Part shown: in pieces, positions 59,392 through 62,880 of the stretch | Numbering within the stretch: the first letter of the stretch is position 1 | How the letters are laid out: the number at the start of each line of letters is the position of its first letter | From: Guillardia theta CCMP2712 | Taxonomy: Eukaryota; Protista; Cryptophyta | DNA length: 64,000 nt | Assembly: GCF_000315625.1 (NCBI RefSeq) | Contig: NW_005434615.1 | Span: 352,305 to 416,304, forward strand | Direction of reading: 5' to 3' | Program-made: the position numbers and the translations under genes | The notes under the pieces: model-generated | Told to the model about the DNA's origin: nothing | Databases searched by the model: none | What the model saw: only the letters and a program-made list of their open reading frames with translations

Positions 59392-59708
59392 CTTTCACCA
59401 TCTCCTCACACTGCCGCGCCGCTTCTCGTTACTGACTACCATCTTCTCTCTCCTCCTCCTCCTCATCGATCATGTACACCACTCGTCTTCATCTTACCGG
59501 CGTCGCTCCTGCCGCCCCCCATCGCGCTCGCCGCCAACATCAAGAACAAGGACGGCGACATGCGCCCGTTCTTGCCTTTTGTGTTCGTTGAAAACCGTTA
59601 TAGACAACAGAAATCTTGTAACGATATTGCAACCGTTACTTTCTCCGCCAGAATCTGGGTCCCAAAATAGATCCCCGGCCAACAATGTCCGCCGGCGACT
59701 GATTCTGC

Positions 59709-61658
59709 ATGGCGCTTACTGGCTCCATGCAGAGGAACCGCCCCATACAACCATCCCTCGCTCTACCATCCCTGCGCTCTCCCTCCTCCCTATCCCTCTG
59801 CCTGGCCCTGCTTCTTGCTCTTCCTTTGGAGTCCGTCAGAGCGGATCTCGCGCGCTTTCAAGACCTTTTCCACACTCCGTTCCGTCCGCAGGACTCTCGT
59901 CACTTCCAGGTCCTTCCTCCTCCTCCTCCTCCTCCTCCTCCTCCTCCTCCTCCTCCTCCCACCCCTCCTCCCACCCCTCCTCCCCCTCCTCCGCCACATC
60001 CTCCTCCATGTCCCGCCTCCCCCTTCTTCGTCCTCTCCTCCAGAAGCTGCTCGCTGCAGTCTTTCCTAACAGCTGTCACAGGTCGACGAGTCTTCCACTT
60101 TCACGGCCAACCCTGATCTGCGATTTGTGTTGAGCTATGCTGACGGGTCGGAGCTGCGAGGTTTTGGGGGCGACGACGTTGTGCATGTGAGAGCGCGAGG
60201 AGCGTCTGCCTTGCCCTTGTTCTCACTCCTCCTTAGGTCGGTGACTTCCATGGACTGGCTCCGTTCGGCTTGCTGTATCAGTGTAACAGCCCGGACTTTA
60301 ACGGGGTAGATGGTATCTTGGGGTTCGGGCTCCCGAAGCCTGGGACACAAGGGAACGAGTTGCCGCGGCCTCTGCTGTGGGCGCTGACAGACAAGATCAA
60401 GCACGACTCGAACGCTCAAGCTCTTCAGCGCAAGTTCTCCTTCTACTCCACGGATGATGCTGCCGAGCTGCAGTTGGGCGGCTACGATCCCAAGAGCTGC
60501 GAGGATGTGATGCATTACACGCCGTCGCTGTCAAAGACTGACTACATCGTTGGAGTCACTTCCGTCAAGTTCGGACGAAGCGCACATGATGCTCGTGAGC
60601 TGCTTCAGTTCTCAAACCCGACAGGAGGCGAGTATCTTCCTGCCATCATGGACTCGGGGACCTCGTGCCTGGTGCTGCCGGGGAGTCACCTGAACGGGAG
60701 GCTGGCGAACGATCCCTTCTCCGACTTCCAGAGCATGTGGTCGCTGGACAACTCTTTCTTCATCTCGATAGGAGGACGAAGTTTTGAGATCCCCTCTTCC
60801 TCGTGGTTCCTGGCGAGAACCAACCAAACCTGTGTGCAGCCTTCTCCCAACGGGATGATCGGCCTGCTGATTGGAGACGTCTTCTTCCGGTCTTACCTTG
60901 TCGAATTTGACATGACCGATCAGGAGAGGCCTGTGATCGGCATCGCGAAGCTGAGCTACATGGTGTCGCCGGTCAAGACTGCTGACCTGGATTACTACCA
61001 CCTCCCCAGGGTTCCGGTGCAGAAGCTCCGCCTGCTCAAGGGCGAGGAGACTATGTATCCGTCAGAGCACACGGAGCGGCTGAGGGAAGTGGACAGGATC
61101 CCCATATCGGACAAGAAGGGCACGCAGTACTTCATGAACCTTGCCATCGGGACGCCGCCGCAGCCGTTCACAGTCATCTTCGACACCGGGTCAGCGGTGT
61201 TCGGGGTGTTCACGGAGCAGTCGGAGTTGCCGCTGTCCATCTCCTCGAAGCTCATGGGAGGAGCGTCGCTGCACGTGGAGGCAGATGCGATGAGCTCGCT
61301 CATGGTGTGGCCCAAGGAGGACAGCAGCGGGGAGACGCTCATGGTGAAGGGATCGAAGTCTGCGGTGCTGGAGGGGATGCGACGGAGGGGACAAGCCAGC
61401 GCGCTGCTACTGGCGGGGCTAGATCTCTCAGCGAGGAGGGCAGGAGCAGGAGCAGGAGCAGGAGTCAGAGGCTCTTCCAACGGGATCGTCGGGGTGGCGG
61501 CGGTGATTCTTTCTCTTATTGTTTCTGTTAGTTTGCTCGTGGCTGCAAGGAGGCGGCGGGCGACTCAATCAGCGCGACATGCGTACGTGATGCTGGATGT
61601 CTCGCACGCGACGTGGCTGAATGGCGGGGAGGCGACCAGGACAGACTCGCATGCTTGA
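59709..61658 (+). CDS. Pepsin-family (A1) aspartic protease, circularly permuted, with a C-terminal transmembrane anchor
   Basis: Exons 59709-59909, 60082-60186 and 60237-61658 give signal peptide, HFQVDESSTF, SYADGS flap, DGILGFG, AIMDSGTS, LIGDVFFRSY, then QYFMNLAIGTPPQPFTVIFDTGS and a TM helix. Confidence 0.9.
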
Positions 61659-61788
61659 GGGTGTTGAACTGTGAATGTACATTGCCAGCTTACTTGTCGA
61701 TTCCTCTGCTGCCCCTCCTCGAACTTCTTCTGCAATTTCCTCTCGTCCTCCTCTCTCCCCTCGTCCTCCACGCCACCAGCTCCTCCTT

Positions 61789-62880
61789 TCACTCCACGCT
61801 CTCGACGGACCGAACCTTGTTGAACTCGTCCAGCGACAACAGCTTGCAAGACTCCCGCAGCTTGTTCTCTGGCGAGGAGTCAGCAGGGCCACCAGTGCTA
61901 CCAGCGGACGTCACCGAGCTCTCGTCGTGGTTGGATGATGCTGATGAAGCCCTCGGATGAAGCCTAGCAAACAGCTCTCAGTGGCAGGAGGAGGAGGAGG
62001 AGGAGGAGGAGGAGTAGGCGCACAAGCACCTTCAAGTTGAGCAGGTCTGGGTTGCTCTGCAGGTTGGAGTTCATTTCAAGCAGATGGCCCTGTCCATGCG
62101 TTAGGAGGGGGACGAAGAGCAGGTGGATTTTGAGAAACAGAGTAGGATACAGGAGGATGTGAAAGAGGAGATGTTGTTGTTGGTGAAGACGATGATTAAT
62201 GGTGATGATGATGGATGCTGATGCTGATGCTGCTGATGATGACAATGATGAGGATGAGGATGACGATAAGGACATGAAGAAGACCTGTATAGCAGCTCGT
62301 ATCTTGAACCTGCTCCCATCATCGCACACCACATCACATAGTCGGGAGTCTTCCTTGACAAACCTGCCCATCCTGTCAGCCCACCACCAACTCCCGACGC
62401 CATCGTCGCACAAGGATCCGTTCTTCTTCTTCCCTGACGGCTTCACTTCCGTCTTGTCGCCTGATCGTCCCACGTCGAAGTCCACGGCAACGATCCTCCT
62501 CCCATCTCTGAACGCCACGTGCGAGGGAGCCAGCCCCACGACACAGAGCGAGTTGAAATGCTGGTAGACGAACTGGTCGGCTCCTTCCTGTCCTCCCACG
62601 TTCGTGGCGAAGTAGTGCGTGTAGTCCCGCTCCCTTGCAAGCAGCTTCTCCCTCGACCGCAGGCACGCGGCGCCCACTGATGTCTGCGTCCTTCAAAGAT
62701 GTTTGTCACCACCACCACCACCACCACCACCTCCTCCTCCTCCTCCTCCTCCTCCTCCTCCTCCTCCTCCTCCTCCTCCTCCTCTCACATATGTCCGGAT
62801 TCTTCGCCTGTCTTGAGACGTTTGCGAGGGTTTTCAACGCCATCCTCCATGCTTTCACCGCCTTCAGCATGGTCGTTCAT
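61789..62880 (-). CDS. Abitram/Simiate (FAM206A)-like, glycine-cleavage-H-like fold
   Basis: DQFVYQHFNSLCVVGLAPSH, SGKKKNG, IRAAIQ|GHLLEMNSNL...PDLL and EGFISII; start exon inferred. Confidence 0.82.

What the first reader, a model, noticed from the sequence alone, without database searches (positions are those of the whole stretch)
59709..61658. Circularly permuted pepsin-family aspartic protease
Seen: after the signal peptide the chain starts near pepsin residue 50 (HFQVDESSTF, like FNPDDSSTF). It runs through the flap SYADGS, DGILG, the normally second catalytic motif DSGTS (60651) and the usual terminal LIGDVF...IGIA. Only then come a prosegment-like strand (VQKLRLLK) and the normally N-terminal QYFMNLAIGTPPQPFTVIFDTGS (61182). 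No DTG motif exists upstream and intron 1 is a pyrimidine repeat. Both Asp motifs lie in one continuous exon, so the reversed order is not a splicing artefact. A TM helix, RRRR and YVML (YxxPhi) follow. Known: A1 proteases keep the DTG...D(T/S)G order with an N-terminal propeptide. Inference: an intact but permuted enzyme whose inhibitory segment is now internal, implying a different activation route.
Basis: partly seen in the sequence, partly recalled or inferred. Interest (0 to 1): 0.85.

Follow-up and report, generated by a model that had tools for sequence, protein, structure and literature searches.

The report
Circularly permuted pepsin-type protease gene
This expressed Guillardia theta gene encodes a pepsin-type protease whose first ~45 residues, carrying one of the two catalytic aspartates, have moved to the far end of the chain next to a membrane anchor; every fully readable pepsin-type gene in this alga has the same order, and I found no paper describing it.

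Summary
The gene is GUITHDRAFT_112491 of Guillardia theta CCMP2712, annotated only as a hypothetical protein. It has three exons: 59709-59909, 60082-60186 and 60237-61658. Spliced transcript contigs from three studies match this model and start 20-47 nt before the ATG, so no upstream exon supplies a DTG.

Residues 51-336 match pepsin 47-326 (Z 22.4, rmsd 2.2 Å). A linker of about 45 residues follows. Residues 386-420, carrying DTGS, then match renin 9-43. A stalk, a membrane helix and a YxxΦ tail complete the protein.

- **Conservation:** both Asp motifs are invariant in 45 homologues, and the flap Tyr is near-invariant.
- **Structure:** AlphaFold models the late DTG piece at pLDDT 86-97. In a split-chain test it docks onto the body (ipSAE 0.78, best control 0.01) and touches the DSGTS loop.
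- **Spread:** 19 Guillardia loci share this order and none is canonical. Five cryptophyte genera and one Ancoracysta twista transcript share it too.

The linker is poorly modelled and varies from 24 to 234 residues across the family. Enzyme activity is inferred, not shown.

The scan reached the same reading before on a paralogue in this genome (s1-431599).

The parts
59662..61688 (+). Transcript extent seen in spliced contigs (5' ends at 59662, 59680 and 59689; 3' end near 61688)
   Evidence: table 8: three runs from three studies. Each has one contig laid as 596xx-59904 | 60079-60186 | 60237-61431 or 61688.
59709..61658 (+). Coding region of GUITHDRAFT_112491 (575 aa from the first ATG; the JGI model starts at the second Met, 59727)
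   Evidence: P0001 and P0346 are identical to the spliced translation.
59709..59843 (+). Signal peptide region (hydrophobic core SLSLCLALLLALPL)
   Evidence: Read directly from the sequence. The cleavage site is inferred.
59910..60081 (+). Intron 1, GT..AG, largely a CCT repeat
   Evidence: It is absent from the transcript contigs.
60187..60236 (+). Intron 2, 50 nt, GT..AG
   Evidence: table 5: the joint 60186>60237 is seen in three runs.
59877..60956 (+). Protease body, equivalent to pepsin residues 47-326 (P0001 residues 51-336; interrupted by the two introns)
   Evidence: Z 22.4, rmsd 2.2 Å over 252 residues against pepsin 6xct. Also.
60136..60138 (+). Flap tyrosine (P0001 Y80, pepsin Tyr75 equivalent)
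   Evidence: near-invariant column.
60651..60665 (+). DSGTS, the C-lobe catalytic motif (pepsin Asp215 equivalent), here the first in the chain
   Evidence: invariant in 45 homologues; residues 233-237 touch the DTG piece.
60957..61094 (+). Linker joining the old C-terminus to the old N-terminus (P0001 residues 337-382); contains VQKLRLLK at 61017-61040
   Evidence: residues 351-380 at pLDDT ~55-60; median length 44 aa in 152 family members.
61095..61223 (+). Transposed N-terminal piece, equivalent to pepsin residues ~3-45 (P0001 residues 383-425)
   Evidence: chymosin 2-42; pLDDT 86-97.
61182..61193 (+). DTGS, the N-lobe catalytic motif (pepsin Asp32 equivalent), here the second in the chain
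   Evidence: invariant; DTGS in 151 of 152 family members.
61224..61484 (+). Stalk between protease domain and membrane; its last ~55 residues (P0001 458-512) are modelled as disordered
   Evidence: pLDDT below 50 for residues 458-512.
61485..61559 (+). Transmembrane helix followed by the RRRR stop-transfer signal
   Evidence: helix 513-545; Kyte-Doolittle 19-residue maximum 2.88.
61560..61655 (+). Short cytosolic tail with YVML (a YxxΦ motif) at 61584-61595
   Evidence: The sorting role is inferred.

Best explanation
This is a genuine, transcribed, circularly permuted member of the pepsin (A1) fold. After a signal peptide the chain starts at the surface loop that corresponds to pepsin residues 45-50. 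It runs through the rest of the N-lobe, including the flap Tyr and the ILG psi motif, and through the whole C-lobe, including DSGTS. A linker of about 45 residues leaves the old C-terminal strand. Only then comes the old N-terminal segment, equivalent to pepsin residues ~3-45 with DTGS.

That late segment folds back into the N-lobe and places its Asp against the DSGTS loop, which completes a normal two-Asp active site. A stalk, one transmembrane helix and a short tail with YxxΦ make the protein a type I membrane-anchored enzyme. The catalytic domain faces the lumen or the cell exterior.

Shown here: the gene structure and its expression, the reversed order, conservation of the catalytic residues, and the spread of this order across the family. 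Predicted only: docking of the DTG piece. Inferred: proteolytic activity, membrane topology, sorting, and origin by tandem duplication with in-frame fusion followed by loss of the redundant ends, with the linker descending from the second copy's propeptide.
For: - **Expression and gene model:** spliced contigs from three studies match the model and begin 20-47 nt before the ATG. The public protein P0346 is identical to the spliced translation.
- **Order by sequence:** residues 61-323 align to renin 62-325 and residues 386-420 to renin 9-43. A junction profile matches chymosin 289-321 first and chymosin 2-42 second.
- **Fold:** model residues 51-336 align to pepsin 47-326 at Z 22.4 and rmsd 2.2 Å. 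Foldseek gives a target-normalised TM-score of 0.69.
- **The DTG piece packs into the body:** it is modelled at pLDDT 86-97. In the split-chain test, body 46-345 plus piece 378-445 scored ipSAE 0.78 against a best control of 0.01. The three runs agreed in at least 79% of contacts and the partner pLDDT was 65. That mark was reached by 51 of 78 solved complexes and 2 of 108 mismatched pairs. The interface includes residues 233-237 and 239 (DSGTS), 120-130 (DGILGFG) and 398-426 (DTGS).
- **Selection:** D235-S-G-T-S and D412-T-G-S are invariant, and Y80 is near-invariant, in 45 homologues at 38-59% identity. Of 152 full-length members, 151 carry DTGS in the late piece and all carry D[ST]G[TA] in the early position.
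- **Family-wide order:** 19 loci in this genome run body then DTG piece, and none is canonical. Guillardia, Hanusia, Hemiselmis, Rhodomonas and Baffinella share the order, as does one Ancoracysta twista transcript. The permuted sequences form one clade with SH-aLRT 100.
- **Independent second model:** in the Ancoracysta model the DTG piece is again confident (pLDDT 78-95) beyond a ~130-residue disordered linker.
Against: - There are no enzymatic data, so activity, pH optimum and pepstatin sensitivity are unknown.
- I could not obtain model coordinates. The Asp-Asp distance was not measured and no permutation-aware superposition was run.
- Structure predictors know the pepsin fold well, so the docking result may partly reflect memory of that fold.
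- Pepsin Trp39 is replaced here by Gly419, as in the SNFAV stretch of BACE-type enzymes (the comparison is from memory).
- No canonical N-terminal propeptide is present, so how latency is achieved is open.
- The three runs holding the spliced contigs are labelled RNA only by guess. The removed GT..AG introns are what show they derive from RNA.
- The one run on record as RNA (X20) was sampled at about 6% and laid only five reads, all at the 3' end.
Confidence: 0.85

Rival explanations
1. The fold is permuted and intact, but the protein is a non-catalytic pepsin-like protein, such as a binding or inhibitor-type protein like the TAXI xylanase inhibitors.
For: No activity data exist. The late piece scores on Pfam TAXi_N. 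A few Guillardia paralogues lack a detectable DTG piece or catalytic motifs: the loci on C56, C9:1007k and C19.
Against: Both D(T/S)G motifs, both hydrophobic-hydrophobic-Gly motifs and the flap Tyr are invariant or nearly so across 45-152 sequences. That pattern is what purifying selection on catalysis would produce. The TAXi_N hit covers only 24 residues, is below the curated cut-off, and lies in the region shared by all A1 N-termini.
Confidence: 0.07
2. The late DTG piece completes the active site of a neighbouring molecule rather than its own, giving a domain-swapped dimer or oligomer on the membrane. Activity would then depend on oligomerisation.
For: The linker is long (24-234 aa) and often disordered, so the piece could reach in trans. 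The split-chain test shows that the piece can dock as a separate chain.
Against: The monomer models place the piece in cis with high confidence in two distant family members. Nothing observed requires a swap.
Confidence: 0.06
3. The reversed order is an artefact: a misassembly, a fusion of two neighbouring gene fragments in the gene model, or a missed upstream exon carrying the true N-terminal DTG.
For: Intron 1 is a simple CCT repeat that aligners skip. The gene model in the public record is computational.
Against: Transcript contigs from three studies are co-linear with the genome, have both introns removed, and start 20-47 nt before the ATG. No other DTG piece exists in the 64-kb window. 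The same order occurs in 19 loci of this genome and in about 200 proteins from independent transcriptomes and metagenomes.
Confidence: 0.01

Closest known systems
Pepsin, renin, chymosin and cathepsin D/E (MEROPS family A1, subfamily A1A; Pfam PF00026)
   Same: Same bilobal fold: Z about 22 and rmsd 2.1-2.5 Å over about 250 residues. Same two D(T/S)G motifs, psi-loop Gly motifs and flap Tyr.
   Different: The chain order is rotated. Pepsin residues ~3-45 follow residue 326 instead of preceding residue 47. There is no N-terminal propeptide, and a linker of about 45 residues lies between the old termini. The protein also has a C-terminal membrane anchor.
BACE1/BACE2 (memapsins) and plasmepsin V / TgASP5, which are membrane-anchored A1 proteases
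   Same: Type I topology with a C-terminal transmembrane helix and a short cytosolic tail bearing a sorting motif. The DSGT form of the second motif and a small residue at pepsin position 39 are also shared. The comparison is from knowledge of these families; BACE2 and plasmepsin V appear only as weak PDB hits.
   Different: Those enzymes keep the canonical DTG...DSG order and an N-terminal prosegment. Here the Asp32-bearing piece is the part of the protease domain nearest the membrane anchor in sequence. In some paralogues and in Ancoracysta it lies within about 10 residues of the helix.
Swaposin, the plant-specific insert of plant aspartic proteinases
   Same: It is the only circular permutation linked with A1 proteases that I found in the searchable literature (PMC3320104).
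   Different: That permutation concerns the inserted saposin-like domain, not the catalytic pepsin fold.
Circular permutations made by duplication and truncation, such as DNA methyltransferases and saposin/swaposin (PMC3320104)
   Same: Two co-linear segments in swapped order. The new termini sit at a surface loop. A linker of propeptide length lies where the second copy's propeptide would have been.
   Different: No tandem-duplicate or half-truncated intermediate was found. The two tandem A1 proteins retrieved, P0163 and P0174, are exact repeats and probably assembly artefacts.

Membership tests
Peptidase family A1 (pepsin family, PF00026) | Bilobal pepsin fold | tested here: met
   AlphaFold model residues 51-336 against pepsin 47-326: Z 22.4, rmsd 2.2 Å, 252 residues aligned. 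Foldseek probability 1.00 and target-normalised TM-score 0.69.
Peptidase family A1 (pepsin family, PF00026) | Two catalytic Asp residues in D(T/S)G motifs, one per lobe | tested here: met
   D412-TGS (N-lobe type) and D235-SGTS (C-lobe type) are invariant in 45 homologues. The late piece carries DTGS in 151 of 152 members.
Peptidase family A1 (pepsin family, PF00026) | Hydrophobic-hydrophobic-Gly psi-loop motifs and the flap Tyr75 | tested here: met
   I123, G125, L307 and G309 are invariant, and Y80 is near-invariant.
Peptidase family A1 (pepsin family, PF00026) | Canonical chain order, with the N-lobe DTG before the C-lobe D(T/S)G | tested here: not met
   The order is reversed in sequence alignments. 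Named vertebrate, plant, fungal, diatom and kinetoplastid hits keep the canonical order.
Peptidase family A1 (pepsin family, PF00026) | N-terminal propeptide that blocks the cleft (zymogen) | tested here: not met
   Only about 10-20 residues lie between the signal peptide and the body. Whether the internal linker substitutes for the propeptide is inconclusive.
Peptidase family A1 (pepsin family, PF00026) | Pepstatin-sensitive endopeptidase activity | not testable with these tools
   This needs a recombinant enzyme assay.
Natural circular permutant of a known fold | Both segments are co-linear with the parent, and together they complete one domain | tested here: met
   Searches show the two segments by sequence. 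In one search the late piece docks on the body at ipSAE 0.78 against a best control of 0.01, a mark reached by 51 of 78 solved complexes and 2 of 108 mismatched pairs. The DTG piece is modelled at pLDDT 86-97.
Natural circular permutant of a known fold | Permutation-aware 3D superposition restores full-length agreement, with the two Asp side chains adjacent | not testable with these tools
Only the contact list shows residues 233-237 touching 398-426.
Membrane-anchored A1 proteases (BACE / plasmepsin V type) | Single C-terminal transmembrane helix after the protease domain | tested here: met
   Helix 513-545 in the model. Hydropathy maximum 2.88, and a transmembrane-like tail in 132 of 152 family members.

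The most novel reading that the evidence does not exclude
In the subfamily of the window's gene, the conserved ~45-residue linker is the relic of the ancestral propeptide and still works as an internal, cleavable inhibitor or folding aid. Cleaving it would give a two-chain enzyme. The Asp32-bearing hairpin would stay tethered to the membrane and the rest of the protease would be held only non-covalently. Activity could then be switched on by linker cleavage and switched off by shedding of the body. Guillardia, and perhaps cryptophytes generally, and possibly a wider group that includes Ancoracysta, would have replaced every canonical pepsin-type enzyme with this design.
Probability: 0.2. Interest if true: 0.85.

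Novelty: new variant of a known kind. Interest (0 to 1): 0.72.

Why it matters
The pepsin fold is one of the best-studied enzyme folds. Its fixed DTG...D(T/S)G order and N-terminal zymogen mechanism are textbook features.

A natural, conserved and family-wide circular permutation shows that the fold tolerates moving a catalytic strand to the other end of the chain. It removes the classical propeptide, so latency must be achieved in some other way. It also ties the Asp32 strand to a membrane anchor.

The family gives protein engineers a natural template for permuted or split aspartic proteases. It gives evolutionary biologists a rare genomic character shared by cryptophytes and Ancoracysta that could bear on deep eukaryote relationships. 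It also flags about 20 Guillardia genes, and hundreds of environmental ones, whose domain annotation hides the rearrangement.

Tried and rejected
- **Upstream exon:** tblastn and motif scans of the whole window found no second N-lobe DTG piece, and the transcript contigs start just before the ATG.
- **Duplication intermediates:** P0163 and P0174 are tandem A1 proteins, but their two copies are letter-identical, so they are probably assembly artefacts. I do not use them as evidence.
- **Linker as propeptide:** the profile alignment runs only weakly into pepsinogen propeptide residues 27-44 and into the plasmepsin X pro-region. The AlphaFold confidence there is too low to say where the linker sits, so this stays open.
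- **Canonical A1 in this genome:** none was found among 29 exon hits and 23 loci. Three divergent loci lack a detectable DTG piece altogether. The genome search scores only the best candidates, so absence is not proven.
- **Taxa beyond cryptophytes:** only Ancoracysta twista turned up. The other divergent members come from unnamed metagenomes. Contamination of that transcriptome cannot be excluded, although on the tree the sequence sits outside all cryptophyte sequences (support 87, quick search).
- **ESM Atlas feature search:** it returned only generic A1 clusters.
- **Literature:** seven searches found nothing on a permuted A1 catalytic domain.
- **Raw RNA-seq run X20:** only five reads laid, with about 6% of the run read, so there is no information on strand, transcript ends or expression level.
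- **Neighbouring ORF:** the convergent ORF at 61964-62677 has no Pfam match.

Full report
**What is there.** The window is contig C59:352305-416304 of an 87.1-Mb assembly in 669 contigs. The spliced product is letter-identical to GUITHDRAFT_112491 (XP_005828497.1, UniRef L1IZK2, 575 aa). That protein is annotated only as 'hypothetical protein / Peptidase A1 domain-containing protein'.

The gene has three coding exons: 59709-59909, 60082-60186 and 60237-61658. All junctions are phase 0. Intron 1 (59910-60081) is GT..AG and largely a CCT repeat. Intron 2 (60187-60236) is GT..AG and 50 nt long.

**Is the gene model real?** Contigs from three public runs in three studies lie on the stretch as 59662/59680/59689-59904 | 60079-60186 | 60237-61431 or 61688, with no base differences. 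The 60186>60237 joint is reported explicitly. The first intron is also missing from the contigs; the aligner placed a shared CAG on the other side of it.

The runs are labelled RNA only by guess, but removal of two GT..AG introns shows they derive from RNA. The contigs begin 20-47 nt before the ATG and carry no extra 5' sequence. tblastn and a motif scan find no other A1-type DTG piece in the 64-kb window.

**Is the order really reversed?**
- Pfam Asp matches residues 63-339 of the 575-aa protein to profile positions 42-313 (E 5e-28). TAXi_N matches residues 400-423 to profile positions 1-24.
- Against PDB sequences, and in the numbering of the 569-aa form P0001, residues 61-323 align to mouse renin 62-325 and residues 386-420 to renin 9-43.
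- A profile of the junction region from 26 family members matches chymosin 289-321 with its first part and chymosin 2-42 with its last part. About 45 unmatched positions lie between them.
- The structural aligner maps model residues 51-336 to pepsin 47-326 at Z 22.4 and rmsd 2.2 Å over 252 residues.

The chain is therefore cut between pepsin positions ~45 and ~47. From my knowledge of pepsin, this is the Cys45-Cys50 surface loop. Also from knowledge, the old C- and N-terminal strands are neighbours in the inter-lobe sheet, and here they are joined by the linker.

**Does the late piece complete the enzyme?** AlphaFold2 with a 45-sequence alignment gives pLDDT above 85 for residues 50-350. The linker (351-380) scores 55-60, the DTG piece (381-440) scores 86-97, and a helix is modelled at 513-545.

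I folded the body (46-345) and the piece (378-445) as two separate chains. The score was ipSAE 0.78 in all three runs, against a best control of 0.01. Contacts agreed in at least 79% of pairs and the partner pLDDT was 65. That mark was reached by 51 of 78 solved complexes and 2 of 108 mismatched pairs.

The confident interface contains body residues 233-237 and 239 (the DSGTS loop), 120-130 (DGILGFG) and 57-68, and piece residues 398-426 (around DTGS). This matches the canonical N-lobe packing as I know it. It is a prediction and may partly reflect the predictor's memory of the pepsin fold. I could not read coordinates, so the Asp-Asp distance is not measured.

**Conservation.** In 45 homologues at 38-59% identity, D235-S-G-T-S, D412-T-G-S, I123/G125 and L307/G309 are invariant, and Y80 (the flap Tyr) is near-invariant. 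Among 152 full-length family members:
- The first motif is DSGT in 132, DTGT in 13 and DSGA in 7.
- The late motif is DTGS in 151.
- The linker has a median length of 44 residues, with a range of 24-234.
- A transmembrane-like segment follows the DTG piece in 132.

This pattern argues for an active enzyme, but activity remains an inference.

**Spread.** A Pfam search of the whole genome gave 29 exon-level hits. With five sub-profiles laid on 23 loci, 19 distinct loci read flap/psi > middle > DSGT > C-end > DTG piece along the coding strand. Three divergent loci have no detectable DTG piece. None has the canonical order.

Named homologues with the same order come from Guillardia, Hanusia, Hemiselmis, Rhodomonas and Baffinella. 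One transcript of the predatory flagellate Ancoracysta twista (EP00164_P002530) has the same order, a linker of about 145 residues and a membrane helix directly after the DTG piece. Its AlphaFold model again shows a confident DTG piece (pLDDT 78-95) beyond a disordered linker.

The junction profile finds 162 cluster representatives at E ≤ 1e-10 among 1.84 billion. Most of the best 150 listed match in one stretch across the junction. Named vertebrate, plant, fungal, diatom and kinetoplastid hits are canonical and score far lower.

On a quick tree of the body region, 31 permuted sequences form one clade (SH-aLRT 100) against 11 canonical ones. Ancoracysta is sister to the rest with support 87. 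The outgroup was an arbitrary set of unnamed canonical sequences, three divergent rows dropped out, and the search was short. The breakpoints are the same in all members I read, which also points to a single origin.

**How it probably works and arose.** The protein is a type I membrane-anchored pepsin-type protease with its catalytic domain outside the cytosol. The YVML tail suggests adaptor-dependent sorting to endosomal or lysosomal membranes or to the cell surface; this is inferred.

The likeliest origin is permutation by duplication: tandem copies fused in frame, and the redundant ends were then lost (the model described in PMC3320104). The linker's median of 44 residues equals a typical A1 propeptide length, which I know from the family literature. 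Together with the weak co-linear alignment to the end of the pepsinogen propeptide, this fits a linker descended from the second copy's propeptide.

Whether the linker still inhibits or chaperones is open. It is well conserved within the window's subfamily (KLxLxKG...PxEH...VDRIPI, with K359 near-invariant). Across the wider family it varies in length and is disordered.

**Known or new?** Seven full-text searches found no description of a permuted A1 catalytic domain. The only permutation linked with aspartic proteinases is the swaposin insert. The library lacks most subscription journals, so this is absence of evidence only.

The sequences themselves are public but annotated as ordinary Peptidase A1 proteins. 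A follow-up agent of this scan reached the same conclusion on a paralogue in this genome (s1-431599). First readers flagged several other paralogues.

**Verdict.** This is a new variant of a known kind.

Noticed in passing
G000 loci L001-L023 (for example C15:748232-752050, C9:825148-828936, C111:189000-196000): All 19 readable pepsin-type loci of this genome are permuted. Three further loci (C56:97500-104500, C9:1004000-1011000, C19:207000-214000) have body segments but no detectable DTG piece, and two of them lack clear catalytic motifs. They may be pseudo-proteases or may have unfound exons.
   Followed up: partly
P0215 (Ancoracysta twista EP00164_P002530), not in the window: A non-cryptophyte predatory flagellate has one transcript with the same permuted order and a membrane anchor. 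It sits outside all cryptophyte sequences on a quick tree. This could be a shared ancient character, a gene transfer or contamination.
   Followed up: partly
P0163 and P0174 (metagenome/transcriptome proteins), not in the window: Two canonical A1 proteins consist of two letter-identical tandem copies joined through the propeptide. They look like the intermediate predicted by the duplication model, but are more likely assembly artefacts.
   Followed up: partly
window 59910-60081: Intron 1 is almost entirely a CCT/pyrimidine repeat. Its in-frame reading would give a proline run, and read aligners skip it as a repeat.
   Followed up: yes
window 61964-62677 (- strand) and 61704-61869: An ORF of 237 aa converges on the protease gene's 3' end, and separate transcript contigs cover 61704-61869 and run beyond it. 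The ORF has no Pfam match. The two transcripts appear to end within tens of bases of each other.
   Followed up: partly
window 16511-22210: Another first-reader note on this window proposes a CHAT protease-SAM-helicase locus. I did not examine it.
   Followed up: no
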